From Oculina patagonica (Eukaryota), in the NCBI RefSeq assembly GCF_052425735.1, contig NC_135769.1, positions 30,566,001-30,630,000 on the forward strand: a stretch of 64,000 bases of DNA, read 5' to 3'. Positions 16,201 to 64,000 of the stretch are shown here, piece by piece. Numbering within the stretch: position 1 is the stretch's first letter; every line of letters begins with the position of its first letter. A program made the translations under genes and the position numbers. The notes below the pieces were generated by a model. The model worked only from the letters and a program-made list of their open reading frames with translations. It ran no database searches and was not told where the DNA came from.

Positions 16201-19200
16201 ACAATACCTAGACCAAAGAAAACTCGACAATAACGGTGTGATTTTTTAGAACAGTACTCGACTTATGACAGGCACCAGGAGTACAGGAACCCATCAGGAA
16301 GTAAGGATGACTAGCGATGGCCAGGATGGAAATGGATTGAAAGGAAGGATCATTTCTTGTGTGTATGAAGTAGAGAGAGAAGCCGGAGAGATAAGTCTTA
16401 AGAAGTAGGGGCCAGTTACAGTGCGTAGGGCAGGGGGGGGGGGGGGGGAGGGAGGAGGAAAAGGGAGGGGGGAGGGTAAGGAGTGAGTGATTAACGCCAA
16501 AACATAAAAAAAATATATATAAACACTTTAAAAGTGCACTTTTTCCGTACCCCCCCCCCCCTCCACCACGAAAGAAAAGAAAAAGAAGACAAGAATGAAA
16601 GGGACCTTTCAAGTCCCAGACACTTAAATAGGGCAGGAAAGGAGGAGTGATCGTGGTGCGGTATGCTATAAATGCGTACGAACCTCTCTTTGTTTTTCTC
16701 GTTTAGCTTGTTCTTCCTTCTGCTTCAACTTGGATAAATTCTCTGCATGCGCCCTCTGTGGAATAAAAAAGAGGGATGAATAATTGGCCACAGAATATTC
16801 CTAACAAAAACTATAGAACATATATATTAAACAGCAAAAAGGTATGTATTCATGTAATTCTGGCAAACTTCAAAAGATTGACGGTCAAGTCTAAGACGCG
16901 AATGAAGTAACCAGCTCGGCTCCATCAAAAATCCTACAAAACCACCTGTTCTGCGGCTGTACAAACCCTGCTTCTGATTAAGCTTTTAATTTCGGCATCG
17001 TTTTAATCCGATTCTTAGTAGTCAGACGATACGCAAAACATATCAAACTCTGCTATGCAAACGCGTTTGCTCCAGACGAAATTCTTCCTTGGAAAGGCAA
17101 AGCTTCGTAGGAGAGTCTACGAAGGCTATTTACATACAAACAGCAATTAGGTCACTCACCTCAAAATTCATAATAAAGGCAGCAAAAATACCAAAGAAAT
17201 CTTCTGTGGTGGCAGACGTCGGTTTTTCCCCAAAGAATTTCACCGTTTCTCGGAACTCCTTTGTCGTCTTTTCTTGCAAGCTGAGCAGATCATTCAGTTC
17301 CCCTTCAGTTTCATCAATAATGCTCTAGAAGTTCCAACGAAAACGTTTTAGCTTTCATCAGTATTATTACAGAAAATTAACAATGCATGTTAATTTTATG
17401 CACCTTAATTTAAAGCATTGTTAATTTATTTAACACTAATTTACAGCAAAGTTACATGAATTCTACCTCTGCGTGATAGTCAGTCAGTCGACATGTCGTC
17501 ATTCAATATTGATTTTAAAATGTTTTTAGTTTTGTAACGTTTGTTTTGTCCAAGGGTAAATGGAGGAGCTGCTCACTTCGATTTTCTTGTGTTTTCTTGG
17601 TATTCTGTTGTTGCACGTTGTTGTTTTGTCTTGTCAAAAAGGCAGGTAGTTATATAAAATTTTTACCCATCAAGCATCAAATTCGCGTTGATTAAATGCA
17701 TGCAAACGTATATCACACGGAAATTCGCGTTAATTTAATGCATGTAAAGATAACTTTTCAAAAATTCACGTTAATTTTATTACGCGTAGATTTTGTTCGC
17801 GTTGTTAAAATGTTTCGTTATATTTCTATAATAAGGTACCATTTAATAAGTGTTCATACAAGGAATAGATTCAGGTCTGTGTCTGATAACATTCGTTTAC
17901 GCACGTCCGCTTTTTTGTTTTGTTTCAATTTATTTCACTTTGTGCCTAACCGCGAATAATCTTCGTCAGTTTAAAAAAAACCATAAAGAAATGTAACTTT
18001 TAGGCACACTTTGTATGTTTTCTTACATTGAAGTTAAATAAAGGGTTACAGTAAACAGACAAGATCTAAGGCTAATTCAAAACAACTGTTGCAGCGAAAT
18101 GTGTACAAAGAAACCCTTTGACAACTCGAAGCCAAAACATAGCTGGTGGTAACCGCGGGCGAACATGTAACCGGTGACCAGAAAGCGCGGGAAAATGGAA
18201 ACACGTGGCAAGAGGGTAAAGTGGTCTTTTATCTGATTGGCTAAGATCTTCAAGCAGCTTTATTTGATTGGTTAATTCTAACTCATAAGAAAACCTCAGC
18301 AGTACAAAGAAAATGTAAGACTTACCTTCACCGCCAGAGAAAAGCGATCATTTGGATCTTGCGATTTAAGTGATCGGAAGGCTCCAAGGTCTTTTTTCAG
18401 CTCCTATTTGAAAAGAAATGAATTAATCCGCAAGTGCAAACAGAAAGAAAAACCTTCAAGTTTGAAATAACATACCCATTTGAACAGAATAACAAATCCG
18501 AACGGAATAACTTGTTACAAACCTGCATTCCAGCCGATAAATCTTCTACTTCACATGAGACCATTTGCCCTGACACTAACAGAAGAAAACAGCAAAAATC
18601 AAAACAGGAAAAAATTGTCAAGTTTTTCCACTGAACACCTGTGGGGGGTGACTCTCATATGAAAGTGACGGGGATGCTCGTCGTCTCGCTTAGGGGTGTA
18701 TATTTTGGATTTTTGGTCTCGCTTAGGGTGTTCCGGGCAAAACGCCAATATTTTTTAGCCATAATGGTCTCGTTTAGGGTTACACACGAAGAAAGATACA
18801 AATATAAATTCTATTCTTAGTTTAGTGGTATCTTTTAGGGGTCAAAAAAACTTGAGCCACACCCAGATTGGTCTCTTTTAATTTTTTCAAAATTTCTGAC
18901 GAGCATCTCCGTCCGTTTCATATAGGAGTCCCCTCCCCCGGGTTGTTGGTCTTCCGATACGAAACAAGCTTCTAAACTAATCAAAAGGGCCACAATCACA
19001 TCCATGTGTAGTTTAGCTTCCAACACGTGATTATTTTAACTTCTCCACATTCCCAGACAACGATTTCAACTTTTACAAGTTTACACGAGTCTCTTTACTT
19101 TCGTCGCAACTTCATTGGTTAAGAAATGTTGCCTGTGCATGTAAGAAGCCAAATGCATCTTGCATGCGATAAGTGCTTTAACAAACTTGGAAAATGGAAA

Positions 19201-22200
19201 AAACCTACCTTTTGCAGCCGTTGGAACCGAAGGAATTTCCTCCTTGATGTTCAAAACTTCGGGACATTTTGATTCGATTGACTGCACTAAAAAGTGCAAG
19301 AGCGTCGACTTGTTATCTGACGTTTTAGTGTTGCTGAGCTAGAGAAGATAAAAAAGAATCAAAGGAGGAATGAAAAATTAAAATATATATGAATAAAGGA
19401 CAGAAAAGGAAGGAAATAATGAAAAAAGAGAGAAATTAAACATCAAGCAAACCGTTTTTAATGAGTCACGTTAGCTACGATGCGAGTATAAAAGGGACCT
19501 TCAGATCGGAGTACGAAGACGAGATCGACTACAAGTACTGACGACTTTTGAATTTCAATCCAGTTACGTTCCTAGAGCCTTAACTCCTTCCTGTTGCTGA
19601 CGGCAGACCAGTTAAAAAGAATGCGATCAGTACGCGATTGGTATGAAACGTGATAATCAAAAGCATAAGCACTAATTTTGAAAAGTCGTAACCGTACTAA
19701 CTCCGATCTGAAGGTTGCTAATATTGAATAAAAGGGAGCATTTGACGTATAATAAATTATAATAAATTTATGACTACAGACACGCGCGGGTACTGCCTTG
19801 ATTTATCTCCAAATTCTCAGTACTTACATGTAAAGAAATGTATGGAAATCTGTTAGGAGATGTTACACTTATACCTTGTTCAAATACTCAATCTTGAAGG
19901 CAGCAGCTGATCCTATTCTCATGTTGCCTTTGTTCATGTAATTACCCATCTTCAACACCAGCTGAAAATATCAGACAAACACAGCGATTAAGTGTGAGAA
20001 ACAGTGCCGGCAAATGCTTATGAAAAAAGTGATCGTCTTATGATCGCTACAGCATTTTAATCGTTTCAAGAAAATCAAGCCACACTGCTAGGAGCGGGAA
20101 AACTCCATACCTCTAAGACCTTCTGCAGTTTAGGACTTTTCCTCAGCTCTTCTGAAGCATCCAGAACAGATTCCAAATCCTACAAAAAAAAAAAAAAAAA
20201 GATTATTACTAAACGATTTCCACTAATCCAACGAAAACATAATAAGCAAAGACGACTGTGTTCATCCTGACTTATGACGCAAGTTTGCAGTAAACTTTGC
20301 TGGTTTCCAAACTTCTCAGCCAATGAAAAAGTAAACAAAAGCACGTGCAATTTTTCGACATGCTGCTATTTTAACGTCTCCGCCTCGACGACTAACTTGC
20401 TTAGTGATTGACCAGTTGCAAGCAACTGGAACCCAACAAAAATATGTCAAAATTTGTCAAAAAAAGAACAAAAACTAAATTGAGTACATTATTTTTTAAG
20501 GTACATGTATGCTCTACTTCTTACCGGCTTGATTTCTTCCACTTTGTCAGCAAAACGAGCTTTAAAGAGTAAGGCTTTCAGACGCTGTTTGTACCAGGAC
20601 ACTTTGCTCATCTGCAACAGTGAAAAATGCATAAATTTCAGCATCGACTGCATTTTTATCAAATTTCAGGCGTTATGCAATAAACTTAACAGAACACATT
20701 TTTGTAGCTGCCCGTAATTTTAGCGGAGAATATTCTGCACGGCAACACCATAACGTCCATCACTTGGATGAATTGAATGACTTAACACATCAAAAGAGAT
20801 GCTTTGAGTAATAAACTGTAAAACTTAGTCATACGTACTTCATAACAAAACCTGTCTGCCTTGTCCAACTTGGAAACATCGTCAGCAAAATACTTAAATT
20901 TCTGAAGCTGAAACAATAGAGACAAGAAACTTGTTTGTTACCGGCTATATCAAGATGCTGGGCCATCAGACAATTATTTCTAAAGAAATTACATGTAATA
21001 GGAGGTTAACAAGTTGCGCTGTTTTTTCTTTCTTTTCCTAGCGAGCCAAAGAATGGAAATAAGGAGTGCTTTCCATTTTTAAAACGCAACCGGTCGGACC
21101 AACAGGAAGTGACCGTTGTAAAATGGAACGACATTTTATATAAGTGTTATAATTTTAGTTGGTTTACAGTTGTCTTTACCTCTTCTTTATCCGGAGCGTA
21201 CAGGAGAAGTTGTTTCAAATGAGACTCACTAAACTTCTTTTCGTCCATTGCTAGAAGCGATTGTTTGATCTCCTCAAACGGTATTTTCAAGTGGCCCAAT
21301 AAAATTGCTGTCGATCAAAATGAACACAAACTTATCAGCAAAGGCAACAACTAAAAACAAAACAAAAAAACAAAACAAAAACAGACGAGATATGACTTGT
21401 TACTCACAAATGTTGTAGGATTTCTTTGGATTCATCACTGCTGGTTTTTCTGGCTTCTTTTCATCTTTGCCTTGAGAAAAAAAAAACAAGAATATTACAA
21501 TCACTTGACGTGTATAAGGTTTGGAAATTTGACAGACAATTTAGTGAGAAGACAAACTTACTTGATGCTCTCTGTATAGCGCTGAAACTCTGCTCGAGTT
21601 GTATAAATTCAATGACTTCTTCTGATGGCTCGTTGTGCCCCAACTGAAAACGAAAACAAGTACATTGGAAATTGAGTTGCAACAAAAGGAGGAACTGGGG
21701 AACAAGATTATGAGTGAGACAGCTTAGCTTTGAATTCTGTACGTTTACTTGGAAACAGAGTACTTATTTGACATCAAACCCTGGCTGGAAAACAGCTAAG
21801 CCAGGGTCTTAAACAGTGAAGCAAATTTGCAATTTCGTCATTCGCAGTCCATCTAATTCTTTCTTAAAATCACCCATCATTGTTCCTTTTTGGTTTTAAA
21901 CCTACTGTACAATGTTTTTCTCCCTTAGTGCACTAAACGTTTGAGGTTTTCTTTCGTTGAAGGTAATTTAAGACACCGAAAGATGTCTGACGAGTCTGTT
22001 AGCAGAGACAAAACATGCGTTTCAGACTAGCCACAACTTCTTGCGCACTAAAACGGGAGTTGTGTTGAATTTTAGAGTTAACCGCTGTGCACAGAGACCA
22101 TACCTGAGCCCACACTGTATCTTCCAGACCGGCAATACTCAGTTTTTCCCAGTTGACTCTTTTAAGCTGCATTTGTCCAGGGACATTTCCAAGGCCGCCC

Positions 22201-25200
22201 AGAGCTGGCGGTGGCGGAACTGTTGGTGGAGGAGGGGGAGGTGGTGGCGGAGGAGGGGGTGGGGGTGCTCCCATGGGGGGAGGTGGGGGAGGGGCGGCGC
22301 TTGTGCTTGCTCCATCTTGGTTCCCTGGGAAAAGAACACAGTTGAATGAATGAATGAATGATATGGGTTCTTATATAACACATTTACAAAGCTCAATGCG
22401 CTTCACAACAAGAACTGTGGGAGAGACCGGACTTATCAGGCGCCTTTGGCAGTAGTGATCCGTCCATGGGTATGATATCACCCCACCACCCAACCCAGAG
22501 ATACATGTGAATAGAACAGATCACAACACCTGGAATTCCGTGCCCTACTCTTTACGATTAGTTTCAGTTCACCAAATTAGTTTTATACAGCACGTTTGAA
22601 AAGGTAAATTTTTAATACAACAACAGCATCAAATCCGCTCTCTTCTGTCAAACTTACTTGAAAAGAGAACGCGTTACAAGGGTTTAACATATTACAGTAG
22701 ATCCCGATTTCTCACAACCTCGATTTCTTTAACCTTCCGATAACTAGAATCAAAAGTCAATTTCCTTGGATTTGCCACACAAAGTTGAACAATACAATTT
22801 TACTTCTAATTTCTTAAACCAATTTTCGTTCCGAGATATCGGGATTCGACTGAAGATCAACGCTTCACCTTACGATTTTTGTGTGTAACAGACGTACATA
22901 CCTTCTGTTTCTTTTTCTTCATCATTGTCCTTTCGTCGTGCTTTCACTGCAGCATCTAACGGATTCTCTGCCTTGTTTGGAGAGCTTGGTTCACTACCAT
23001 GATCTTGAACAAGGAAAAAAACAAAAACAGAAGGAAACAGCGATGAAGGAAAAAAAAACTGCCACATAGTGTTTACTGACCAAAATAACTCTTGTGCTCT
23101 TCACACGTACATCTTAAAGCAAACACAAACAATAATTTACAAATAAAGCAGGGAGAAGTCTAAGAACCCAAAAAAATTCGACACTTATGACGTATAACTC
23201 CACGGAGATATACGAGGTATCTGCGACTGGTTGCTATTGTTATAGACACGACACGGATCTGTGGAGAGCTACGTCATTAGTATGGAACATTTTTGGGCAA
23301 ATCTGAGAAAAGAAAGGAATTGAGCCCAGAAAGAGAGGCAAAGAGGGCTACATTGTTAGTGGTGAGAAATAGCAATGATAGTAGTATATAATAATTAACA
23401 TCAATAATACTACAGCTTATTTACCTCCAACCTCTTTCATTTCCGATATCATTTTCTCGCTCTTATCTAACGCTTCTTTAGTTTCCATCAACTCCTGAGT
23501 AGTGATGGCCAACTGATGCTGAATTTTCTCCACAGACTCTCCAGATGCCTCCCCAGAACCATCCCCAATACCACTATCCCCGCTCACTGAACGTGGGGTT
23601 GAAGTAACGATTCCTGCACCAGGGGATGTCGGTGTCCCGGGCTCGGGTGAGGATGCTGTTATGGGGCCATGATGGACCTGCGCTTGAGTCTGAATACTTG
23701 TTACACTGGACTTCCTGATCTCATCTGCTAATAATGCATCGGCCAGCTCTTCTGTTTAATGAGCAGAAAACAAAAGAAACAGCTTGATTTCTCTGTTCAC
23801 AGCCTCTCTATTTTTCAATGCAGAAGAACGTAAGAGAAACAGGGGATGCGAAAAACGGGGGAGGGAAGGGGGTGTGCGAAAATGCCAGGAACATGAATTA
23901 AAAAGCACTTTTAGACTGGTTTCCTCTCCTACTCCTCCAATAGACATGTACCACAAATCCTCACAAAGCAGAAAGCATTTGCCAGTTATGAAACCATGGA
24001 AGATCGAATTTTTTCAATAAGCATCTCAGCATTTTTCTTGATCCATTCAGTTTGTCTCTAAGTGTCAGAGCAGTGTTAGTTCAGTGTTTAAACTGTATCA
24101 GCCGATGGCTCGATAAATTAACTGTAATGTGTGGCTTATATTCTCCAAACATTTCTTGGCGATTCACCTAACTGTTTTGCAGATAAGATGGCTGCAAAAT
24201 GCACTAAGATGTCTAACACACTCATGTATAAATCAATTGAACTACTCAGTGTAAATGAGCAAAGTGTCAACACTTTGTTTTGTGGCATTTACATTGTTCA
24301 GTTTGTACTTTACTCAGTTTCCTCAACCCACCCCTCCCCCTTCCCATGTTCACATGCCCTACAGCACATCACAGGTAGCTTAATCACAGTATTCTGCTAA
24401 TAAATCCCCCTCTCACGGATTCTGTTCTCTAGAGCGTCCAATATAAATTTTATGGAACTTAATCTTACCAAGTCCTGCAAGATCAAGATCTACATCGTCG
24501 TCGTCCCACCCTGAATCAGGCGTACCATTTCTGGATCTTGTGTCACGCACTGGCACAGTATCCAGGTCTGATCCTGCCAAACAGTAACAAATCTGTCATT
24601 TTTAAATTTTATTTACTGGTATGGGCTTCTATTTTCTTTTCTTTTGCTTCTAGCAAGAAAAAACTATTTAACACCTGAATGCAGCTATCATGGGAGAGTG
24701 GAGGTTTTTACTTTAACGTCGAGCAAGATTACTTCAGTACATGAGGTAATTATGATAAAATATCTGAAACAAAGGAGACTAAGGGAGAACAGCATACATT
24801 TTCTGTATGATGTCAATTCCTTTCAGCCATATTGTCAAATTGTAGGACAACTGCTTTCAGTTAGATATCGAAATGGCTAAAAGATCAAATGAAAAATAGC
24901 AATGTGCCACCTACCATAACCAAATCCAGGACTAAGTCGACCCCTGGCGGCACCTGATGAAGGCCAGTGACCATACGGCTCCTCAGATACAGCTACAAAA
25001 TAAAAAGAGTGCACAAAGTCACATGCATTTAATCTAGAATCTGGTCAGAGCCACATGGTCTCACTCTGATTTTTTTTCCTTGCTTTCAGTACAAGTGACA
25101 TGGTGCATTTCAACTTCCTCCTTACCTGCTCCAGGCGTGGTATTGCGAGGTCTTGGTGCATCTGCAAGCCGCATGGCCTGCACTCTGTACAGTACATCAA

Positions 25201-28200
25201 CAACTTCATCATTGTTGGTATCCAGACTAGGAACAACACCAGCTAAAAAAAAAAACAAAAAAACAATCAAACTTGTAAACAAATAATGACTGGCTTGAAA
25301 GGCCTATCTTACATGTACAGTGTAGCTAAATAAACCAACAGATTCCCCATTGTGCCCTCTCAGTTCCTCCCTGGATCAAAAGATGTCTGAGATTCGACTC
25401 AAAAAAAGGAAAAACCAATAAGGCACTTCATGGACCTCTGCAAAGCTACATGGTTAAGGTAAAGGCTTTAGGTTGAATCTCAGCTGATACATTAATGTAC
25501 TTGTCCATGTATCACTTGAGCAAAGAGCTGGCTGATAAGAAAGGAAATGTCTGTAAAATGAGCCAAGTGTACTCAAGCTCCTCTTTCCAGTTTTAGAAAT
25601 ACAGTATCCAGACAAATGTACATAATTGCACAAATTAAAAAATATATATATTTTTCACATACTGTCCATTTTCCTAGAGATCATTCTTGCAGCTGCTCTG
25701 TCAAATGCTTGCTGCTCTGCGTCAGGCAGAAGCTCACTCAAGTAGTGCAACATCTGCAGCTTGGCTCCGTCATCCAGCACAGGCTCCAGTGCGTTGATAA
25801 GTCTCTGCACATTTCTGTCTTTACTGTATTGATTAAGGCTTTGTTTGACGACAAGTTGTTCACCACGTGTGAGAAGTTGACTCATCTGTTGAATGGTAAT
25901 TAAAAATATCTGTTTCTTAAAATTTCTTACTTAAGGGGTTACACAGTCTAGGACCTAAAAAATTAGGTTTTGCATAAAGTTCATGTAACCAAGAGTACCT
26001 TAGGTTTGACAAACAGATTTCTTTTCAAGTAAAAATCCCTTGAATACAGTCATGCAACTGTAATTTATTATCACTATATGAAATTTTTTTTACTTTGCAT
26101 GTAAAATTCCTCCATGAGGGAGGGTATAGAAATTTTCTGGAACACAATCTGATTGATAAAATAAATGTGTGGTTCCAGAAAATATCCATACTCTCCTTGT
26201 GGAGGATCATTGGAAATTCTGAGGGGGAGGAGGCTTTAAAGACCCAAAACTTTTAAAACCTTATGTGGGGGGAATATGATTGGATATTTTCTGGAACACA
26301 ATGGTATACCTGCCAACTCTCATGCCTTAAGCGTGAGTCTCACGCCCGGCCTGCAAGTTGAAAACTTCGATCTCATGCCAACTCACGCTTACAGCCAATT
26401 TCTCATGCCTTGTCGAAAAATGTGAGTAATTACAACCATAACTAACACACTTGCCAAAAAAAAGTAAACTCAAACCAATGCAAGAAAGAAAACTACATGG
26501 TAAATGTCTTGAGTAAATGACAATACTTTCTCGAAAATTTCAGAGTTTTGACAACAAAATTAATGCACTGGGAATGACGTTGTGTTTAGCAAAACACGTC
26601 CTTGGTCTGGAACCGGGATTCTTTTGAAACGTCTTGGGAATACTTCGGACTTCTTCAGAAATAAAAATCTTCGGACATGGTTGTGTCATTTTCAGGAATC
26701 CTGGCCCTCTCAGGATAAAAATCTCACGCCTTTGACCCAGAAAAAGTTGGCTGGTATACAATATGGTACAATTTTCATCTCAAAGGTTTAAACCTACCTG
26801 GATTTTGAACTGCCTGGCAAGCGATCGAAGATCATTCCTGTTGTATGGTCCTGCTCCATTCATGAACAAATCGCTTCTCAATGAAAAAGCCTTCGATGCC
26901 ATAGATGAACACCTTGACACTGTTGCAGGTCTTTCATTTTCAAATGTAACAGACAGCTGCGATGACTTGCTCGATGATGGAAGTGATGACAGTGATGACT
27001 GGTGTTTTAACGCACTCATAGGACGCCACTGAACCAAAAGGGTTGGCTGTGAGCCACTTCCCTTCAAAAGCTGCACAACATGATGGTGTGACTTTCCCCT
27101 GGAGTGAAATCAATAAATGCCATAACGGTGTAAAAAATAAGTTTAACAGGTTGCCCTTTAGGCAAGATGGGTACGTTGTGCACTAGCTTAAAGTTGAGTT
27201 CCAGTTTTTAGAGCAAGGTGTCAATAAGGAATTCCAATAAGTCGGTAGCTGTTAATTTGCCTCACCAAAACATCAGAACTTTTCTATTACATGTACTACA
27301 TGTAATTTGTTGGGTCAGGGAGCTGACCTTGTTGGGTCAAAATATCCAGAAAATTGCTTTGTTAACAATAACGGTTTGTTTTTAGCTACTGACACTTCTA
27401 AAGGCAACACTGTTCACATTATGAACTTACTATTATTGTTAATATTTATTGCAATGTCCACCACATAACGTGTTTTTGCTTTACCTGACATTTAATCCAT
27501 TTATTTCTAAAATGTGATCTCCAGCCTTAATCCCAGCCTGGGAAGCTGCTCCTCCTAAATAAATGAGAAAGACATGACTCAACTCTGAGCAACTACATGT
27601 AGTAAGTGATGTAATGAGTACTCACATTTTTTTGGACAATGTGTGGTTCCAGAAAATATCCATACCCCCACCACGGAGGGAATTGGAAATTCCAGAGGGG
27701 TGGGGGGGTCAAGGGCCCAGGAAATTCCGAAGAGGAGGGGGGTTGCCAGTGAAATTACGTTTCCAGACAGTCAAGTTTGATGCAGTGCAAACTAGTTTCA
27801 AAAATCGTTTCTTACCTACTCTACAAATGTTTTACATAGCAAAAATAGCACCCTGGGTTCTTGATTCACAATCGCTTTACATTTAAAACGGGTTTTCTTT
27901 CTCCTGAAAGCACACTGAAAGCAAATAATTTCACTGAAATCCTCCATGTTCGTTCGTGGATGCGGCCGCCATTACTTGTTACCAGTCCCCCGAAACTTGT
28001 CACGTGGTTTGACCGAAATGCACTGGTGTCAAATATTGCTTGTTTCACGTTCGATGGAAGGAAAATCGTCCTTGTTTGTGAAAAGTTTCACGTTTATTAG
28101 CGATGAAAATAGTGTAATGATGTCAGAAACTCGAGATTAACTTGTTCTTGTTATTTCTGGCTATTTGTTTGTAATTTTCCTGTTAAATTTTGCTTTCTCA

Positions 28201-35700: not shown

Positions 35701-36355
35701 TCCTCGTTTTGCCATGGTTCCATGCCGCGCGGAAACGCGGAATGTTTTCGCCGTGTAGCAGAAGCAAGTTTTGCTTCTTGGAGACAAAAAATTGACCTTG
35801 GAAACAATGCTTCCCGCATGGCAAAACTGGGAAACGTTGGAGAAACATTGACGCGCTACGAAAGTTTCTGGAAACATGTTCCTCGTTTTGCCAGGCCTTA
35901 AGGACGTAACTGCTGTTCGAAAAGTTTGATCGACTTTATAAGACGCTTATAGCTACGAAGTTTTTGGTTTGGTAGTCCTGTGTCAATTCAGTGAATGTAC
36001 AATCCAATCCGGCATCTTTTAGACAGTTTTTTAAAGATACAAGTACCAGGCTTTGTTCACTGACTATGAGTACGTTTGCTCTCGCGAAAATGTATCGAAG
36101 CTCGCGCGCGAATGAAATTCTGACGCGCGCAAAATAATGAAGCGCGCGTTCGAACTAGTGACGAAATTAAACGTCAAAACACATTATGACGTCAGAAAGC
36201 CGCCGTTTTACAAAGCATCAAAGTACTCCGAGCTACTGTACAAACAGCTGCATCATGTAGAGGTTTTAGAAAAGCAACTCGAGCTAAATGAACGTTCACC
36301 GAAATTTTGGATATCAAATTGACGGAATGCGCAAGTGACGAAAAGTGAGTTTGGC
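32751..36355. promoter_or_regulatory. Divergent promoter/5'-UTR region between the two formin genes, with three full CRE palindromes
   Basis: ATGs at 32750 (-) and 36356 (+) point away from each other. TGACGTCA at 34388-34395, 34407-34414 and 36187-36194. CpG-rich patch (CGCGCGCG) at ~36080-36150. Confidence 0.55.
35643..35898. mobile_element. Harbinger-like MITE
   Basis: TAA-GGCCCAGCAAAACGAG...GAAACATGTT and AACATGTTCCTCGTTTTGCCAGGCC-TTA inverted termini. Confidence 0.7.
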
Positions 36356-39300
36356 ATGAGTACAACAGTCGAAAATAAAGAATCTACCAAAGAAGGTATG
36401 CGGTAATACTTGCTATGCAATTTCACAGTAATCTTCGTAAACTTAATTGTCGCTGGTTAGTGATAATTCCATGATCAGTTTTTCAGCCCTGTGCTATTAA
36501 GATTTAATCGACCCGCGCGATACACATTTCAGGAAGCGCATTGTTTCTGTAAGTCAGTTCTAGCTAGAGACGAGCAGACTTTCTTTCGGAACATGTCTGT
36601 CTTTATATCGATATCAGAAACGATTGACAATAACTTTGCGCTTTCTCTCAGAAGCGATCCAGCAGAAAATGGTAATTAACTAGTGTAGAAAAAGTGTGAA
36701 CTCGGTTGAAAATTGTTTGTGGCGTGATCTTTAAGCTTACTATTACCAAGAGAAAACACTAATCCAGAGCAAACATATCTAAAAAGCCGAATCATGTTGA
36801 TGAAAAAGTGTTTAGTTCAATTGCAGAAAAGCCGATAGAATAATGTAGTGGAAGTCGAAACTTTCTTTTTTATATATTAAATGTTATGTAGGTACACTAT
36901 GTTCAGCGCTTGTCCACAAAGAAAATTTTAATTCTGAAATTCCTTCAGTTTTGTTGTTTTAAACTTACAAATTTGCATGCTATCAAAATGACTGTAAAGT
37001 AGTTTACTAAAACAACTAAAACATTGAGTTATAGGAAGAGAAAGGGGCAGGAAACTAAAGGCAATACTAAAGCAATACTGTTGTCACCAGCAACAGTTCT
37101 TTTCAGAACTGCTCTCACCCGGACGATTACACTATACGAACAACTAATAGTATTTCAGCCCTTTATTTGTCAGGAAACATATGCATTCCGATAAGTCATT
37201 CATGCCTTAGTTTGCACTTCGCTGCAAAGTGATTCCAAACGTTCATTTAAATAGAGTTTCCTTAATCCCTAAATCCCAATTTGATTTGATTGCTGGCATG
37301 TTGTCAATTACTGTACGCGCTTACGTTTCACTTCTAAGCAATTTTGCAGAAACACTTTTTGTTCTCAAAGGTTTTCGTTCGTTGAAGTCTCCTTTTTTGG
37401 AACTTAGAAACTGCTCAATTCTGTTACCACATCTACGAAAAAAATTGTTGCTCATAAAACAAGTAGTTATCAAACAATTAAATTAAGTAAATTTAGTGGA
37501 AAGCCACAAGTATGTTTATGTTTTCTCAAGAACGCTGGATACCTTTGTGAAGTTAATAATAAGTAGATATCTTTTCACTTGTTGCCTTTTATTGTTTTTC
37601 ACGTTATTTGTCTTCATTTTATGATCTATCACTGTGCCAGAGACTTAAAAACATTGTCAGAAAGTGAAAATTTGATTGATCCTAATAACTTGACTATAAT
37701 TTACTAAAACAATAAGAAAATTCATTTAATTGCTTCCCTGCAATAAAGCTGAGGAATAAATTACGTCTACGATCGAGAAGGGAACAGTATTCTCGAAAAC
37801 AAAATGCAGCAGCACTGTATATCTTCTGTTTTAATTTTTGCCAGCATTGCCATCGTCTTTTTTTTCAGATGAGAGATCAAATTACTGGAACTTTGTCAAC
37901 AGTACCTCGGACTTTTTCAAATGGTAATTCATATCAAAGGGATTATTTCCCAGTTATCTTACAATTTGTTACAAACTTTTTTTTAATATAAAATAACAAA
38001 AGTAACTGATTATATTCTCATTTGCTTTTAATTTACTTTAGCAACTGGAAGTTAATTCTTCCTTTTTCTGTTGCAATTCTGCTGTTTTCTGCTACTTTTA
38101 TCACCAATAATGGCGTCACGTTTGCTGTTAACATTTGGGTATTTCCAAGTAAGTAATCTTTTTTCTGTGGGATAATGAATCACAAGAAAAGAGAAAGAAC
38201 TGATAAGAACACTATGTTGAATTTTTATTTTGCTAACACAGGTTTTGCTGTGCTCATGGCTTCCTTTGCGTGCTCAGCTGAGCTACAAAAATGGATTCCC
38301 GCAGGTAATTATTCGATGCTCGTACAACATCACTTGATGTAATTGTCGTTAGGAGGTAAAATATGCCACCAAATCTATTCTTTTATTGCGAACTATTCTA
38401 TTCTTTTAATGCGAACTAAAGTACATAGTAAATAAAACCCTTCAGGCGGCTGATATATTGAAGGATAATGTCAAGGCTGAAAGATTGTCCGAAAAATGAA
38501 CAGTTGGCCGAGAAGCAAAGCTTCGAGGGTAACTGTGAGCTCAATTTACACTCTATCTTATTTTACTACGAGAAAGTGTCGCCAAGGTAACAACTGTGTT
38601 GTCGATAATATCATGTCATAACAATAACAACAAATTTTAAAGAGAAACGAATTGTTTTAGCACTTGCAATAATTCAAATCTTTTATATTATTTTATTAGC
38701 AAGCGCTTTTAATTAGTCAAATATTATGAGTTCGTAAGTGTATATATTTATAACACAATATAAACTTTGCATTTCAATCTTTACATAGACTTCTGGCAAA
38801 ATCAGCGACCGCCATTTCTTCCAGTTGTGCCCTGTGCCCCTGCCCCACCTCCTCCACCACCGCGTGCCCCACCCCCTCCTCCCCCAAATACGGTAAACGG
38901 GCACAAACGGCAGAGGTTGGATTGCAGGAAACTGTCCTGGGAACAACTCAGCCCAGACCTCGTGAACAGGGACACGATTTGGAAAAAGGTATCTAACATT
39001 GTAAATTTGTATTTTTTATTCCAAACGTACGAAATTTTTAATATGAACGTAACCGAAATCCATGCTTCCTAACATACTGAACATTTTATTGTTAACTTGA
39101 TAAAAAGTGAAGGCGAGAAAATAACTTATTAACTTTTTAATTTAAAATTTCTTCCAGGTTAGAAAACATTTGCCTTTGGAAGGCATTTTTGACTCAGAAG
39201 ACATAATAAGAGAATTTTCGGTCATACCATCCACAGGTAAGCTATGTAACATGCTGGGTTTTTTTTTTTTTTTTACATAAAAAGCCATTGCACAATAAGT

Positions 39301-42300
39301 TAAGTTTTAAAAATACCAGGTAACTTATGAGAGTTTATGTACATTTCATCCGCCTTTGCTGATAAACTTATGAACTTTCGAAATAAATTAAATCAATGCA
39401 ACTACGTTGGAAAGTTTGATAATACGAGAAGACGATTGGCACAGACGAGTTGCGGCGTTTTAAAAATGGCAGGCATGCTCTCATGCTCGGGATACCTAGT
39501 AAAAATACTGCAACAATGAAAACCGAGCAAAGTCAATCATGAGATACGTCAATACAGCGAATGTTAGAGGGTAAAATCATCGCTGACTAAGGATCTGATT
39601 ACATGGCGAATCATGGCAGCCCCGGCTGAAATTTCAACCCGGTTTGCCGGGCTGAGATTTCAGCTCAGCTTCCAAAACAAATCGTCGTGAAAAGACGTTT
39701 GCGATTGCATGAAGAAAGTTTCATCCCGGGCCGAATTACCACCCCGGCTGAAATTTCCAGCCTGGTTTTTGAAACCGGGCTGGAAATCTCAGCCCGGGCA
39801 AACGGGCTGAAAAACCTCATGTAATCGCGTGCCAACCCCTCGTTGAAAGTGAGCTTACGGATGCGCAGTGATGGTTTTCAACGAAAGAAAATGGCTGCCC
39901 CGAATATTTTTCAGTTTTAAAAAGTGTTCAACCCGGGCTAAAATTCGCCATGTAATCGCAACAAACAGCCCGGCAAACCGGGCTGAAATTCGCCATGTAC
40001 TCAGGCCCTTATTTCTAAACAGGTATAATTGTTTTGTCCTTGATGCGATGATTTTCACCGATTCCCTAATGTCAAAAATAGTAACGTCGATGCATGAGCA
40101 TGAGTATGACAAACTGAATTAATTTTAAAATTACGGTACAAGCCTTGTATTTACTTTATAATATGTTCCGTGTCTTTTTCCTAAAGGAACCTCGCGAAAA
40201 AAAGCCAAACGAGAAAATGCCATGGACGAGAAAAAGATTTTTAACATCTGTAAGTATTGCTTCTAGAGGTTGGGTAGAAACTGACGGAATTGAGTAAATT
40301 TGAATGGCGACTTGAATAAAGTGAATAAACGAAGATGAGTTTTCAGGTCAAACTACGGAAAAAATTAAATTTCTGAGTAAAATTTATTAACGAAACAGAG
40401 GTTTTTAGACCAGGAGTTGTTGTTTGTTTTTCTTCAGGCAAAATTCCTGCCAGACACAAAAGGGCCAGGCTGTCTATTTTGCAGCGTAAAATTGCGAAAT
40501 GTTTGGAAGCAGGAAGCACATTTTATAGCAAATGCCCAGTGACTGTATTTCCATATGTCTATGAATCAGTTTAATATTGGTATTGTTACTTTGTGTTCAT
40601 TATTTCCGCCATGTTTTTCAGCAATCGTGTTGACGCATTACAAGCTGAAGGCAGAAGGAGTGGCACAATGTCTAATATCCGGGACTTCTGATTTGACATC
40701 TGATGTGCTTAGACAACTGTTGGCATTTGCCCCAGATGAGCGAGAGGTAAAGAGAAATGCCCTTGCTAGCCTTGCAAGTGCATGTTAATGAATGAAGTTT
40801 AGTGTTTTAATCGCTATAATACATACAAATGGACAATCTCTTGACAGTCGGATATTGAGAATCTTATCAGTCGGCAGTCTCGTTAATCGTACTATGCAAT
40901 TTTACTCTAACCCTGAGCCCAGGAAGAAAGTTCGCGTGGCCAAAATGAAATTGTTCCAATAATTATCCATTATGCAGTTTCTAAACACACAAGAGCGAGT
41001 CGAACGGTAAATGCATACATTTTCCTAAAGATGATACTCAGAATGAAGATAGGTGGTGATGCCGGGAACTTATAGAATACAGGGTCAGGATAGAGTATTC
41101 ATAATGTGTTTTTTCTTTTTAGGCAATAGCTTTAAGAAAACGTGAGAGGGAGAACGAGTTTTCACTCGAACCAGCTGAGCGCTTCTATCTTCAGGTATTC
41201 TAGCGTGAAAAATTGTAAATGTTAGTGTTGAGTCTAAAATAAAATGTTGTGTGTCAACCAACAGCGTTGAAAAGCAATTGGAGAAAAATATGAATGAATT
41301 TTCTTTTGGCAGATTGCGGCCTCGGTGCCTTCTTACAAAGAAAGACTTCGAACAGTATTACTTAAAGCACAGCTTCAAGAAAGGATCGCACAAATTAAAC
41401 CAGTAAGATACTTGAACTACCTACAATTTATCTTATTTGTAGATTACAGAAAGGAAGAGAGGATGATGATGATGATAATGTCGATAGCATTTCTCTCACG
41501 TTGACCGGAGGTCCCCGGTTCAAGACCTCCCCTTGCCACTAGCTGGATTTGTTTCTCGGTTGTCCCGAGTTCAAATCCTCGACCACGCTTTGTATATAGC
41601 CAACTGGTCTGCCTCCTGCCGGGCCTTGTTATGTTCATTTAAGATTATTTGTTTCCTCTGTTTCAGTGGCATGCCTGTAAACTAGCTATCTCGTTGAGAT
41701 ATGAAGCTGAGTGCATGACCACTATAAACATATATTTATATTTTATTTATTTATTTTTGTTGTTGACCACGTCAGTCACACTTAACCTGTTCATCGCGTT
41801 TTGATTCTGTCAATAAAGCGCCTTTCCTTTTTTGGTCAAATCAATCAAAGACGGTTTTGATCGTCATCGTCAATCTAAACACCTTTTAATTAATCGTCTT
41901 GTTTTCAGTTGTAGCTTTCCTCGACACAATATACGGCTTAAACTGGATAGGAACGAAGACCGACGTCTGTTTACCCGGACTAAATCATGTCCTGATTTTT
42001 TATTTTGCATTTCAGCATCTTGAAACAGTCATTACCGCGTGCCAGGAACTCATGTCCAGTGAAAAGCTCGCAACTTTTATTGAGGTATGGAAAATATGTG
42101 TAACACGTGCAGTCAAGTGTTTATCTGCCAAGTAAAATAAAAGATGCGTACTGATCGATGCTGCACAATTTTTTATCCATAGCTGCTTCTAACGATGGGA
42201 AACATAATGAATGGAAGCGAAATTTGTGCTTTTAAGATAACTTTTGTTACAAAGGTAAGCTTGACAGATTATGAGATGTATATATTAGGTATATACTCAA

Positions 42301-45140
42301 GGAGTGGATAGCGTTTTTGGCGCGCGCTGATTGGCTACTCAAACTCCGAATATCCTTTGTTATTATTCAACACATGCGCGCGCTGCCCAAATATGGTCAA
42401 AATAATAAAGTTATCTGTCATCCGTACATAACAGATATCCTGCGATATACGTAGGTTGCGAAGATTCATCCGAAATCTTGTAAAGCGCTACGTAATTACA
42501 GTTTTTCTATCTGCAAAATATGTTTCGTTGACAATTTGTTGAATAATAAAACAATTATCCTGCTTAATCTTGCGGAATATCGTCTGATTTTAGCCAACTC
42601 GGCCTACGGCCTCGTCGGCTAAGTATCAGGCGATATTCCGCGCGATTTCGCAGGATAATTGTTAACTATTCACCTCCGAGCAACGCGTGCGAGAAAATTG
42701 TGATCTTTTTACAAGAATAAACTAGTCAAAAATCATCCTTCGGGCTTTATCATCTCACTGTTTTAAAAGTATATACATACTTAAACAACTGCGGCTTCGT
42801 AAATATCCACCACTATAGCCACCTCCACTTCGATGAATAGATAGCCTGTTTGAGCAGGTCAGAGATTTTCCAATGATACTATTGCTTGTACTCTATACCC
42901 AGCTGATGGATTACAAATCGTCCGTGAACAAGACCACTTCAGTGCTGGATTACCTTACTAGGGTCATTATCACCAAATGTCCGCACATCGCAGCTTTAGA
43001 AGATGATCTTAGACACGTGAACCAGGCATCGCGAGGTCAGTAAAAATGAATTCTCATAACAAGCATTTATAAGGATCGACTTCAGTAACAGAAAGCAGAA
43101 ATCAAACTGGAACAAATCACAAATACATCAAGCCCACCAGCAACTCCGCACCACAACAATAACGACAGCAACAATAACAGTAATTGTAAAATTTATTAAC
43201 TATTCATGAGGGTGCAAACCAATCCCATGACTGTATTCAGATCACATGTACACAACTATAAACCCCAATACAAATCAAACAATAGAATTAACTTTTGATA
43301 CAGACTCCTGCTCAGCTAATTAGTATTCATTAACTTTTGATACAGATCTCTACTGATTCGCATAACAAAACTTTGCATTCAATTTATTGTTTTCATTTCA
43401 CAAGTAGAATAAAATATTCGCGTCTGACCTGTATGAGCGTTTACAACACTCGCCATTGTAAACGCCCATACAGATCTTCCGCTCATATTTTATCTACTGC
43501 ATAAATGTCTTATTTTTACTATACAGTGTTCTTTGGGATGAAGTTTTCTTATATTCCCTTTCAAATGATTTAACCAAAATTCAAGACCAGAATCTAACAA
43601 GTTACGAGTAGCTTTCAGTATATTTTGGACACTTCTTAAAATATAAAATTAAAAAAAATATAAAAGAACGTCAAGGTATTGAAAAATCATCGATTGCTTT
43701 CCTCTTATCGTTTGATTTGATTTCAGTTCCATTCAAGTCACTTGACAAGGAAATATGCGAACTGTCCACAGAAATTGAGGTAACAGCAGTGTATACCACA
43801 ACTCAATGTACTTGCATTTTTTTAGCTACTCAATGCATGTACATAACAAATGTACATAACAAATGTTTTAAATGCTCTTTCTATTAGGTTCTGGAAGAAG
43901 ACGTCGAGAAAATAAATAATGACTGCATAAAAGATGAAGGAGACTCTTTCCGCGCTAGTATTGAAGTATCCTTTCAGTGAACTATACCATCACGGCATGT
44001 GCTTGCGCAATGCGTTTGCTTTATAGTGAATACATGTATATTTTTATTACAAAATACAGAAACATTAGATATGTAATTCCAGAGTTTTGATTGGCTTAGT
44101 GCCACTGGATATGAAAAATTATACCATGCCCAACAAACATGGTCGACAAAAATCGTCTTCCGTCTCTTTGCCAAAACAAAATACAAGATTTAATAAATAA
44201 TAAATAATAATACATAATATTTTAAGAGGAGGCCTCCAATCACCTTGGGGTGGTTTTCAGGAGGGTCCTCTGAGAAAATAAATGTTAAACCTTAAAATAT
44301 ATTAAAATCTAAAAGACAATAAAAAGACAAAACCTATGCGGTATGCTAAAAAGATTAATTATAAAAACTAGAACAAGATCCTTTATTTAAGGATATCTAG
44401 TTGTTATTAAACAATTATTTCGCTTGCGGTTGTTGGAAAGAGATGATCATAGTCAAATAGGGGCTACTCGCCTCGTTGGTTTACCCTATCTACCATCTCA
44501 TATCTAACGCGCGCTCGTGGAATAGTTGCATGATAAAATCTGAAAAGTTCCGATCCTTGGAAGAGAAATAAACTGTAGTGATAGCAAGTCAGAATAATTC
44601 TTTGACAAACTCCTTAGCTATTTGCTGTCTCGGCAAAAGAAGAGCTTAAAGACGTGCTGTCGCTTCGGAAGAATGCCAAAAGAAAGTTCACCCTCCTTGT
44701 TCAGTATTTTGGTGAGGATTCTAGTAAGCCTGAAGAATTCTTTGGAATTTTCGCCACACTTCTTCGCCAGTTCGAGGTAAATTTTAATCAAAATTAATTG
44801 CCATGTGCTTTCGTTTCTTTTCAGTCTTTTCACGCAGTCTACACGCAATAATATCCTAAATGACTAGACTTATCTTGCATCAAGGCAATATACTCTTCAT
44901 GCAAACCACAGTTGAGCCCGCGATGAGTGGACTCGTGTTGATGTTATTGCCTGCAGAGAACATAATATCACACAACTTTTCGAAAATTATACCTCTGATA
45001 GAACGATAGGGAAAAAAACATTCATTCAGCTACCAACGGGCCACAAAAATGGATCGAGTCGAAAATTTATAACTAAATCGAAAGTATAAATGTTTATTTT
45101 ACTTTTTTCGTTTTAGGATGTGTTGAAGACGTACAAGTGA
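36356..45140 (+). CDS. Delphilin-derived formin with predicted N-terminal transmembrane hairpin (TM-TM-FH1-FH2), 17 exons, 493 aa
   Basis: Exons: 36356-36395, 37869-37923, 38042-38148, 38242-38304, 38789-38988, 39158-39236, 40187-40249, 40622-40746, 41123-41194, 41313-41402, 42016-42084, 42183-42254, 42903-43035, 43727-43779, 43888-43965, 44618-44776, 45117-45140. All are GT-AG and phase-compatible, total 1,482 nt, with no internal stop. FH1 is APAPPPPPPRAPPPPPP. FH2 motifs: KLSWEQL..TIWKK, FNISIVLTHYK, LLAFAPDERE, YKERL, MGNIMN, AFKI, LMDYKS, YFGE..PEEFFGIF. The FH1-FH2 exons are high confidence. The first four exons rest on splice signals and phase consistency only. Confidence 0.85.
39590..40008. 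mobile_element. Harbinger-like MITE with internal CCGGGCTGAAATTT repeats (intron 6 of the plus-strand formin)
   Basis: GGATCTGATTACATGGCGAAT ... ATTCGCCATGTACTCAGGCC inverted termini. Many CCGGGCTG/CAGCCCGG units. Confidence 0.7.
41500..41730 (+). mobile_element. 5'-truncated tRNA-derived SINE-like repeat (second family)
   Basis: B-box-like GGTTCAAGACC, followed by a body with a second GAGTTCAAATCC and a (TTTA)n-like tail. Confidence 0.5.
43966..44617 (+). other. U12-type (minor spliceosome) GT-AG intron
   Basis: Donor GTATCCTTT matches the U12 consensus RTATCCTT. Branch-site-like TTCTTTGAC at 44598-44606, 11 nt before the exon. No extended polypyrimidine tract. Confidence 0.85.
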
Positions 45141-46254
45141 AGAAACGAAAATTACTAAATAAAGCATTCCTCGAATGAAGAAAATTTTATTAAACGCGTA
45201 TAAAGATTAACATCCAAAAAGCTTCAAAATGATTCATTACTTGTAACTTTGAAAAGAGCAGTTTGTTTGGATATATCAAGATTGACCCAACAACTCTCTC
45301 TAAAACTGAATAAACTACTTTTGTTTTTTGCTCAAATATCATAATATTTAAACAATGTTTTATATCCCTTAAGTGTTTATGAAAAAAACGTGACGTGTAT
45401 AAAAAGAAGCAAATATTTTATACGATGAAACGATATTTACGGCCAAAATGCCAATATCCAATGAGTGTTCGTTTTGTAAATACTTTAAACTGAATAAAGC
45501 TTGAGTTATTAGATAACTTTGCACTTTTGTTTGTTACTGCTAATAAAGCAGGCTAAACTTCATGCGCGCTCAATCCAATGCGGACAAAATCCAAAAATGT
45601 GCAAAAACACAAAGAATAATAGGCTGGCGACAAAATAGTTCTTAAACAGGTGCTAAAGATTCCAACGCAGTAGTTAAAGAATTCTGACATAATTATGCAC
45701 ACAACTTTATTCAGTGTTTTCACCGTTTCCTATACACCTTCATTTCGCCAAAAATCCATATGAGAACTTTCAGTCCGCGGCGCGCCTTATGTATAGTATC
45801 AGCTACTGCTTGTATTTAAACTTCCCCAGCTTTGTCGAGTTAATAAATCTGTAGAGGGAGACTTTTACTAACGATGTGTATATAAGCGTCAAATACCCAA
45901 ACATTCAAGCATTGACTATATGCATATAAATGGTTAAAAAATTAGCATGTTCGACACGTTGTTTACATCTGGCACTTTTGCATTGATATGGTGAGAGGCC
46001 GGCGTTTGACTCCTGAATCGAGTTTGGGAGGCCAATAACAACAGCCGGACGCAAGTAAAGAGATTTGAGCTGCGCAAGACTTCGGTTGAAAATAAAATTG
46101 CAAATAAAATAAATCAATTCTTGAAACACATCTCTCGGCCCTTGAAGAATGATTAAACCAAAACAAGTTATGGGAAATAAAGGAGGTGAATCGTGCAACT
46201 TAAAGGTGCTATAAAACATGGAACGACAATTTTACCCTATACAAATCCTTTTAT

Positions 46255-46580: not shown

Positions 46581-46657
46581 TTGACAAACAATTTACTCTC
46601 TCACAACACCAAGAAGTCTTGTTCCTGCGCTTGTACTTCCAACAAAAACGTATTTGA

Positions 46658-47101
<444 letters not shown>

Positions 47102-50446: not shown

Positions 50447-64000
<13,554 letters not shown>

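What the first reader, a model, noticed from the sequence alone, without database searches (positions are those of the whole stretch)
17160..45140. The two head-to-head formins share 12 intron positions: inverted partial duplication of delphilin with an N-terminal domain swap
Seen in sequence: every intron from the FH1 exon to the end of FH2 falls at the same aligned position and phase in both genes. Examples: DTVWAQ|/DTIWKK|, YNI|S/FNI|S, APDKEE|/APDERE|, RFCYE|/RFYLQ|, EIKP|/QIKP|, KVLE|/TFIE|, YLNK|/FVTK|, AAK|V/ASR|V, 53-nt and 78-nt exons of identical length, and NFE|/QFE|. Both FH1 exons also start in phase 1. SILLGHLK vs SIVLTHYK share the delphilin-type His. Inference: the plus-strand gene arose by an old local inverted duplication of delphilin's FH1-FH2 half. 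It replaced the PDZ/HHD scaffold with a membrane anchor and lacks the tail. The proteins are strongly diverged yet both frames are intact, which implies long-term selection.
Basis: partly seen in the sequence, partly recalled or inferred. Interest (0 to 1): 0.72.

Follow-up and report, generated by a model that had tools for sequence, protein, structure and literature searches.

The report
Coral membrane formin born from delphilin
Two neighbouring, oppositely oriented actin-assembly (formin) genes in a stony coral do share their whole intron pattern, but most of that pattern is ancestral; sequence trees and position still make the short membrane-anchored gene an old, selected copy of its delphilin-type neighbour's catalytic half.

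Summary
OBSERVATION: confirmed. The minus-strand gene has three PDZ domains, FH1 and FH2 (delphilin/GRID2IP architecture). The plus-strand gene has 17 exons and encodes 493 aa (36356-45140). From the end of the FH1 exon to the end of FH2 they share 12 of 12 intron positions, with identical phases and near-identical exon lengths.

INTERPRETATION: partly supported. The intron argument is weak.
- An FMNL-like formin 15 Mb away shares 11 of the 12 positions.
- The DIAPH-like gene shares 8, and another formin 6-7.
- Only one intron, between the 53-nt and 78-nt exons, is exclusive to the pair.

The conclusion still holds on other evidence.
- In a tree of this genome's formin FH2 domains, the plus family is sister to the neighbour (99/97 support). 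Four alternative groupings are rejected by AU tests (p 0.010-0.018).
- A plus-family profile scores the neighbour 59 bits above the next paralogue.
- The head-to-head pairing recurs in Porites and Desmophyllum.
- dN/dS is 0.11-0.14.

The plus gene keeps an ancestral U12-type intron that delphilin has converted to U2-type.

Named relatives were found only in stony corals. No delphilins from other phyla could be fetched, so the age and mode of the duplication remain open. The scan had already noted this stretch (s1-310634, s1-310818).

The parts
32187..32750 (-). Minus gene: first large coding exon (188 aa from its ATG) with two PDZ domains. This is the delphilin-type N-terminus.
   Evidence: Pfam PDZ E=8.2e-30, two stretches. 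90% identical to the exon upstream of the plus-type gene in Porites.
27484..27621 (-). Minus gene: exon carrying part of a third PDZ domain.
   Evidence: Pfam PDZ_6 E=2.7e-6 and PDZ E=2.5e-5.
22104..22370 (-). Minus gene: FH1 exon (polyproline) plus the start of FH2. It ends ..D-T-V-W-A-Q with a phase-0 GT donor. The acceptor lies inside this open stretch.
17160..21643 (-). Minus gene: the 11 FH2 exons after the FH1 exon. The last ends ..N-F-E before GTGAGT, and the gene continues into a tail.
   Evidence: Pfam FH2 exon hits.
32751..36355 (.). Stretch of about 3.6 kb between the two start codons of the divergently transcribed genes. It may hold a shared or bidirectional promoter (inferred).
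   Evidence: Start codons at 32750 (-) and 36356 (+).
36356..36395 (+). Plus gene: exon 1 with the start codon (M-S-T-T-V-E-N..), phase-1 donor.
   Evidence: Same layout as exon 1 of the Porites orthologue.
38042..38304 (+). Plus gene: exons 3 and 4 (38042-38148, 38242-38304), encoding two adjacent hydrophobic helices with a 5-residue turn.
   Evidence: Mean Kyte-Doolittle hydropathy is at least 1.6 only for 19-aa windows starting at residues 34-36 and 56-61. Conserved in all orthologues. No paralogue elsewhere in the genome.
38789..38988 (+). Plus gene: FH1 exon (two short polyproline runs) plus the start of FH2. It ends ..D-T-I-W-K-K with a phase-0 donor.
39158..44776 (+). Plus gene: the 11 FH2 exons after the FH1 exon.
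   Evidence: Pfam FH2 E=1.2e-66 on orthologue P0003.
43780..43887 (+). Plus gene: intron between the 53-nt and 78-nt exons. Its counterpart in the minus gene is 18404-18522. It is absent from all five other paralogues modelled through this site.
43966..44617 (+). Plus gene: U12-type GT-AG intron. The donor is GTATCCTTTC and a TTCTTTGAC branch-like site lies 12 nt before the acceptor. The minus gene has a U2-type GTAAGT donor at the same position (intron 17325-18325).
   Evidence: The same position is AT-AC U12 in the DIAPH-like gene and GTATCC U12 in the FMNL-like gene.
45117..45140 (+). Plus gene: last exon, seven codons (D-V-L-K-T-Y-K) plus the stop. There is no tail after FH2.
   Evidence: Same C-terminus in P0003 and P0001.
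46691..47101 (+). Histone H3 gene downstream of the plus gene. It serves as a synteny marker.
   Evidence: Same neighbour in Porites. Fused to the formin in the Stylophora model P0011.

Best explanation
The plus-strand gene encodes a 493-aa formin. It has a short N-terminus, two adjacent hydrophobic helices (a membrane hairpin), a short FH1, a complete FH2, and only seven residues after that.

Its FH1-FH2 module is the closest paralogue of the adjacent, divergently transcribed PDZ-formin (delphilin/GRID2IP architecture).

The most likely history is this.
1. An old local duplication of delphilin's catalytic half ended up head-to-head with the parent.
2. This happened before the split of the two main stony-coral lineages (Porites against Oculina, Stylophora and Desmophyllum).
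3. The copy gained four new 5' exons and lost the tail.
4. It diverged quickly and has since been kept under purifying selection.

The 12 shared introns are real but largely inherited from a framework older than delphilin. FMNL-like, DIAPH-like and one further formin share much of it.

Inferred function: the hairpin holds an FH2 dimer on the cytosolic face of a membrane. There FH1 recruits profilin-actin and FH2 nucleates and elongates filaments. No DID/DAD-type autoinhibitory domain was seen.

Shown here: the gene structures, paralogue relationships, synteny and selection. Inferred: the duplication mechanism, membrane insertion and activity.
For: - The 12 of 12 shared positions and phases are documented under the observation check.
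- One intron is exclusive to the pair among the seven paralogues modelled through it.
- ML tree (LG+C20+F+G4): plus family + neighbour 94/92. Support rises to 99/97 once a mollusc DAAM is added. AU tests reject the plus family with the FMNL-like (p 0.018), DIAPH-like (0.018), DAAM (0.015) or C4:4.31 (0.010) genes.
- The neighbour's own branch is short (0.58), so this is not a meeting of two long branches.
- Plus-family profile scores: neighbour 210 bits, DAAM 151, DIAPH-like 132, FMNL-like 61.
- Synteny: a PDZ/HHD gene on the opposite strand lies upstream of the plus-type gene in Porites evermanni and Desmophyllum pertusum. TFCD lies downstream.
- Named orthologues come from Stylophora, Pocillopora, Porites, Desmophyllum, Orbicella and Oculina.
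- dN/dS is 0.14 against Desmophyllum (373 codons) and 0.11 against Porites (274 codons).
- There is no DNA-level similarity between the two gene halves, so the event is old.
- Lasso Trp, knob Ile, the G-N-x-M-N motif and the post Lys are present. Their roles are from my own knowledge of mDia1 and Bni1.
- There are two hydrophobic windows and none elsewhere.
Against: - 11 of the 12 intron positions are also in the FMNL-like gene, so introns alone cannot point to delphilin.
- The single exclusive intron could be ancestral and lost in the other genes.
- The tree holds only this genome's ten formins, six plus-type orthologues, one mollusc DAAM and three plant formins. It holds no delphilin from another species. 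The neighbour is called delphilin by domain architecture only.
- The plus-family stem is long (1.46 substitutions per site).
- Raw identity of plus to the neighbour (31.8%) barely exceeds that to DAAM (30.6%) or the DIAPH-like gene (30.2%).
- The AU p-values are near 0.01-0.02, not extreme.
- The plus gene keeps a U12 intron that the neighbour lacks. This requires a later U12-to-U2 change in delphilin.
- No reads were laid on this genome, so the splice junctions here are predicted.
Confidence: 0.6

Rival explanations
1. The whole delphilin gene was duplicated, in tandem or inverted. The copy later lost its PDZ/HHD exons and tail and recruited the hairpin exons. The event was not 'partial' at birth.
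For: It rests on the same tree, synteny and intron evidence as the best explanation. Nothing in the data shows where the duplication breakpoints lay. The plus gene keeps the intron right after FH2, which suggests that it once had downstream exons.
Against: No relics of PDZ or HHD exons appeared among the plus-strand open segments between 34000 and 38700. The four 5' exons have no paralogue in the genome.
Confidence: 0.2
2. The plus family is an independent, old formin lineage, in effect a tenth subtype. It merely lies beside delphilin. The shared introns are ancestral and the tree grouping comes from thin sampling and a long branch.
For: 11 of 12 introns are also in the FMNL-like gene and 8 in the DIAPH-like gene. 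The plus stem is long (1.46). The plus gene keeps the ancestral U12 intron, as the DIAPH-like and FMNL-like genes do and the neighbour does not. Pairwise identities to delphilin, DAAM and the DIAPH-like gene are nearly equal.
Against: The grouping has 99/97 support under a site-heterogeneous model, to a short-branched partner. AU tests reject four alternatives. The profile score lead is 59 bits. The pair shares one exclusive intron and one exclusive His. The adjacency is conserved across both main stony-coral lineages. All named hits are stony corals.
Confidence: 0.15
3. The plus gene derives from the FMNL-like gene on the same chromosome, which shares 11 of the 12 introns.
For: The exon lengths are nearly the same: 128, 69, 87, 69 and 165 nt. 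The U12 intron is retained in both genes.
Against: The AU test rejects it (p 0.018). Its profile score is among the lowest of the paralogues (61 bits) and its identity to plus is the lowest (20%). It lacks the 53|78 intron. It lies 15 Mb away.
Confidence: 0.03

Closest known systems
Delphilin / GRID2IP formin subtype (PDZ-HN-PDZ-FH1-FH2), one of the nine animal subtypes of Pruyne 2016 (PMC5047451)
   Same: The FH2 is closest to this genome's PDZ-formin by tree, profile score, one exclusive intron and a shared His. FH1 comes before FH2. The plus gene lies next to that gene.
   Different: It has no PDZ or harmonin-like domains and no tail. It has a two-helix hydrophobic hairpin instead. The FH2 is highly diverged, with a 6-residue shorter loop after G-N-I-M-N. 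It keeps a U12 intron that the neighbour has lost.
Plant class I formins (for example formin-like protein 6), which are transmembrane formins
   Same: A membrane-spanning segment lies N-terminal to FH1-FH2. These were the only non-coral proteins hit by the single-sequence search.
   Different: By my own knowledge, plant class I formins have a signal peptide, an extracellular proline-rich domain and one transmembrane helix. Here there are two adjacent helices and almost no extra-membrane loop. The trees place the plant formins elsewhere, so this is analogy and not kinship.
Lipid-anchored animal formins: the palmitoylated short delphilin isoform, prenylated INF2-CAAX and myristoylated FMNL (all from my own knowledge)
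   Same: A formin catalytic module is tethered to a membrane.
   Different: Those tethers are lipid modifications. Here the predicted tether is a hydrophobic protein hairpin encoded by its own exons.
FMNL-like and DIAPH-like formins of the same genome (C12:15.26 Mb, C5:22.62 Mb)
   Same: They share 11 and 8 of the 12 intron positions, including the U12-type intron near the end of FH2.
   Different: AU tests reject either as sister of the plus family. The DIAPH-like gene has GBD/FH3 exons upstream. Neither has the 53|78 intron.

Membership tests
Formins (FH2 proteins) | FH2 domain over Pfam's threshold | tested here: met
   Orthologue P0003: PF02181 E=1.2e-66, residues 136-484. Window exons hit PF02181.
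Formins (FH2 proteins) | Proline-rich FH1 directly N-terminal to FH2 | tested here: met
   Two polyproline runs in exon 38789-38988.
Formins (FH2 proteins) | Actin-binding residues: lasso Trp, knob Ile, G-N-x-M-N, post Lys (list from my own knowledge of mDia1 and Bni1) | tested here: met
   All are present in the plus gene in the alignment. No activity was tested.
GRID2IP / delphilin subtype | FH2 groups with delphilin FH2 domains of other animals | tested here: inconclusive
   It groups with this genome's PDZ-formin at 99/97 and four alternatives are rejected. No delphilin from another species was in the tree. All three homologue searches failed to return one.
GRID2IP / delphilin subtype | N-terminal PDZ (and harmonin-like) domains | tested here: not met
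   Plus gene: Pfam finds only FH2 in P0003, and the N-terminus is a hydrophobic hairpin. The minus gene does meet this feature (PDZ E=8.2e-30).
Plant class I (transmembrane) formins | FH2 groups with plant class I formins | tested here: not met
   In the unrooted trees the plant formins do not group with the plus family.
U12-type (minor) introns | Donor matching RTATCCTTT, with a TCCTTRAY-like branch site 10-15 nt before the acceptor (consensus from my own knowledge) | tested here: met
   Plus intron 43966-44617: GTATCCTTTC and TTCTTTGAC 12 nt upstream. The DIAPH-like gene has ATATCCTTT..TTCCTTAAC..AC. The FMNL-like gene has GTATCCTTT..TTCCTTGAC. The minus gene has GTAAGT. Splicing was not observed.

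The most novel reading that the evidence does not exclude
Stony corals carry a lineage-specific tenth formin type. It is the first animal formin anchored by an integral-membrane hairpin. It was made by copying delphilin's FH1-FH2 half beside the parent gene and capping it with new exons. It also preserves an ancestral minor-spliceosome intron that the parent lost. That would date the duplication before the loss.
Probability: 0.45. Interest if true: 0.65.

Novelty: new variant of a known kind. Interest (0 to 1): 0.5.

Why it matters
Animal formins are held to fall into nine ancient subtypes (PMC5047451). A coral-restricted, strongly selected offshoot of delphilin with a protein membrane anchor would be a clear case of a new formin type built by local duplication plus exon gain. 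It would be a candidate for actin assembly directly at a coral membrane.

The work also gives a caution about method. Shared intron positions among formins are mostly ancestral. The FMNL-like, DIAPH-like and delphilin-type genes and this family share one exon framework, including a U12 intron. Introns therefore cannot by themselves assign parentage.

Tried and rejected
After that I sent no reference containing those places to any database or search tool. Local scripts did read the window file. One local BLAST of the two gene halves and one of contig C1366 included that stretch.
- Plant-first profile search: a profile search with a plant formin as first row, meant to reach long animal formins, returned only plant formins.
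- Coral-only profile search: this returned more plus-type fragments and one mollusc DAAM, but no delphilin.
As a result the INF-like gene lacks its 5' FH2 part. The C-terminal FH2 exons of C4:4.31, C4:30.1, C4:9.07 and C7:17.20 are incomplete.
- The look-up of encoding contigs found nothing for the Stylophora and Pocillopora proteins.
- The atlas search named only generic FH2 clusters.
- The hairpin N-terminus has no other copy in the genome.
- Many weak FH2 'hits' at profile positions 257-346 appear to be an unrelated repeated ORF, and the C6 hit resembles them. I excluded all of these.
- The FMNL label rests on a weak best PDB match to FMNL3 (E=2.8e-4) and on motif memory. No GBD/FH3 exons were detected near that gene.
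Full report
WHAT IS THERE

The window is C12:30566001-30630000 of a 529-Mb genome. Contig C1366 is a 94-98% identical second copy of window 42816-51334. Its exons match the 147-aa NCBI protein 'formin-A-like [Oculina patagonica]' almost exactly: three of four exon matches are 100% identical and one is 96%. That protein sits on a contig of the same length, 11516 bp. The genome is therefore almost certainly Oculina patagonica, a stony coral.

Two genes face away from each other.
- The minus-strand gene starts with an exon holding two PDZ domains (32750-32187; Pfam E=8.2e-30). It has part of a third PDZ further on, two harmonin-like stretches by eye, then FH1 and FH2. This is the delphilin/GRID2IP architecture described in PMC5047451.
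- The plus-strand gene runs from 36356 to 45140. I modelled it as 17 GT-AG exons encoding 493 aa. It is collinear, exon by exon, with the 492-aa Stylophora protein P0003.

CHECK OF THE OBSERVATION

I enumerated frame-compatible GT/AG pairs between in-frame anchors and read the small exons directly.
- From the end of the FH1 exon to the end of FH2, both genes have 12 introns with phases 0,1,1,0,0,0,0,0,1,0,0,0.
- Exon lengths are 82,63,128,69,87,69,87,130,53,78,165 nt (minus) and 79,63,125,72,90,69,72,133,53,78,159 nt (plus).
- In an alignment the introns fall in the same columns, or one column apart in a variable linker.

The His of G-H-L-K / T-H-Y-K occurs in no other paralogue modelled at that site.

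ARE THESE INTRONS SPECIFIC TO THE PAIR?

They are not. A Pfam FH2 search of the whole genome found ten formin loci plus the haplotig. I fetched them and modelled their FH2 exons with home-made profiles and splice-site enumeration.

Labels for the other loci:
- C13:8.09 Mb is DAAM. It has GBD/FH3 exons upstream and is sister to a mollusc DAAM at 97/95.
- C5:22.62 Mb is DIAPH-like. It has GBD/FH3 exons upstream, and its best solved relative is mDia1 (E=4.5e-14).
- C12:15.26 Mb is FMNL-like. Its best solved relative is FMNL3, but only at E=2.8e-4.
- C5:22.46 Mb is a DRF/INF-like gene with GBD/FH3 exons upstream.
- C7:17.20 and C4:9.07 are FHOD-like by motif (from my own knowledge).
- C4:4.31 and C4:30.1 are unnamed.

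Number of the pair's 12 intron positions also found in each gene (and the junction calls):

| Gene | Shared positions | Notes |
|---|---|---|
| FMNL-like (C12:15.26) | 11 | all but the 53\|78 split; one sits within one codon in an ambiguous stretch; exon lengths 60,128,69,87,69,81,127,101,165 |
| DIAPH-like (C5:22.62) | 8 | |
| C4:4.31 | 6-7 | |
| DAAM (C13:8.09) | 0 exact | some lie 1-4 codons away, in other phases |
| INF-like (C5:22.46) | 0 exact | |
| FHOD-like (C7:17.20, C4:9.07) | 0 exact | models incomplete |
| C4:30.1 | 0 exact | model incomplete |

Most of the shared pattern is thus an exon framework older than delphilin. Only the intron between the 53-nt and 78-nt exons is exclusive to the pair. 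It is absent from all five other genes modelled through that site: FMNL-like, DIAPH-like, DAAM, INF-like and C7:17.20.

A U12-TYPE INTRON TELLS THE SAME STORY

The intron after the 78-nt exon differs in type between the genes.
- Plus gene: donor GTATCCTTTC, with a branch-like TTCTTTGAC 12 nt before the acceptor.
- FMNL-like gene: GTATCCTTT..TTCCTTGAC at the same position.
- DIAPH-like gene: an AT-AC intron, ATATCCTTT..TTCCTTAAC..AC.
- Delphilin-type neighbour: an ordinary GTAAGT donor.

Human DIAPH1 is reported to depend on U12 splicing (PMC6239176). The plus gene therefore keeps the ancestral state and the neighbour has changed.

WHO IS THE CLOSEST RELATIVE?

I built an ML tree under LG+C20+F+G4. 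It holds the ten FH2 domains of this genome, six plus-type orthologues and three plant formins.
- The tree joins the plus family to the neighbouring PDZ-formin at 94/92.
- With a mollusc DAAM added, support is 99/97.
- AU tests reject the plus family with the FMNL-like gene (p 0.018), the DIAPH-like gene (0.018), DAAM (0.015) or C4:4.31 (0.010).
- The neighbour's branch is short (0.58) and the plus stem is long (1.46).
- A profile of the plus family scores the neighbour at 210 bits, DAAM 151, the DIAPH-like gene 132 and the FMNL-like gene 61.
- Raw identities are close: 31.8% to the neighbour, 30.6% to DAAM and 30.2% to the DIAPH-like gene.

The tree lacks delphilins from other species, because all three homologue searches failed to deliver any.

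AGE, DISTRIBUTION AND SELECTION

- Named relatives come from Stylophora, Pocillopora, Porites, Desmophyllum, Orbicella and Oculina. There are also unnamed transcript contigs of 1.7-2.0 kb. Automatic names disagree: DAAM1-like, Delphilin, formin-A-like, hypothetical.
- In Porites evermanni and Desmophyllum pertusum the gene again lies head-to-head with the PDZ/HHD gene. The PDZ exon is 90% identical in Porites. TFCD lies downstream, and a histone gene too in Porites. The window has the same histone H3 at 46691-47101.
- The pair therefore predates the split between the Porites lineage and the lineage of Oculina, Stylophora and Desmophyllum.
- dN/dS is 0.14 against Desmophyllum (373 codons, 84% identity) and 0.11 against Porites (274 codons, dS about 1.4).
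- The two gene halves share no DNA similarity beyond a few marginal, non-significant short matches.

THE N-TERMINAL SWAP

- Four small 5' exons encode M-S-T-T.. and then two hydrophobic stretches separated by T-N-N-G-V.
- Only 19-aa windows starting at residues 34-36 and 56-61 reach a mean hydropathy of 1.6. Outside the first 100 residues the maximum is 1.05.
- The module is conserved in all orthologues and has no other copy in the genome.
- The protein stops seven residues after FH2. The minus gene continues into a tail.
- Membrane insertion and hairpin topology are inferred, not shown.

VERDICT

The evidence for an old local duplication of delphilin's catalytic half is:
- tree position and profile score;
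- one exclusive intron;
- a shared His;
- conserved adjacency.

The 12 shared introns are mostly ancestral. Two questions remain open: whether the duplication was partial or whole-gene, and how far back it goes.

Noticed in passing
L035:5421-6051 (C5:22.62 Mb) and L044:5799-6320 (C12:15.26 Mb): At the same FH2 position, the DIAPH-like gene has an AT-AC U12-type intron with a perfect TTCCTTAAC branch site. The FMNL-like gene has a GT-AG U12-type intron. This looks like an ancient minor intron shared across formin subtypes.
   Followed up: partly
G000 C5:22471396-22489879 (-): There are about seven successive Drf_GBD-like matches of 100-180 aa, spaced about 3 kb apart, upstream of the INF/DRF-like formin at C5:22.46 Mb. 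They may be a tandem array of alternative or duplicated GBD exons.
   Followed up: no
L036:620-623 (C5:22.62 Mb, - strand): The first FH2 exon of the DIAPH-like gene changes frame inside a run of eight A. This is probably a homopolymer error in the assembly rather than a broken gene.
   Followed up: partly
L048 (contig C1366) against window 42816-51334: An unplaced 11.5-kb contig is a 94-98% identical copy of the 3' part of the plus gene and its downstream region, probably the other haplotype. Its annotated product names the species as Oculina patagonica.
   Followed up: yes
L049:12072-16585 and 20269-23361 (Porites evermanni): Several plus-type exons occur twice in tandem blocks about 2.9 kb and 2.2 kb apart. 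This is either a local segmental duplication or an assembly artefact in that genome.
   Followed up: no
window 13236-15779 (-): An 847-aa open reading frame is rich in Pro and Ser with many polyproline runs. It lies downstream of the delphilin FH2 on the same strand. It may be the delphilin tail exon or a separate gene.
   Followed up: no
L045 about 530-535 (C12:15.26 Mb, - strand): The FMNL-like gene seems to use a GC-AG intron (AAG|GCAAGT) at the linker position where the other genes have GT donors.
   Followed up: partly
many loci, e.g. C2:19425797, C3:26021302, C5:13691995: There are about 20 weak FH2 'hits', all to profile positions about 257-346 and mostly in open frames of roughly 200-330 aa. 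They look like a repeated, probably transposon-borne, coiled-coil ORF and not formins.
   Followed up: no
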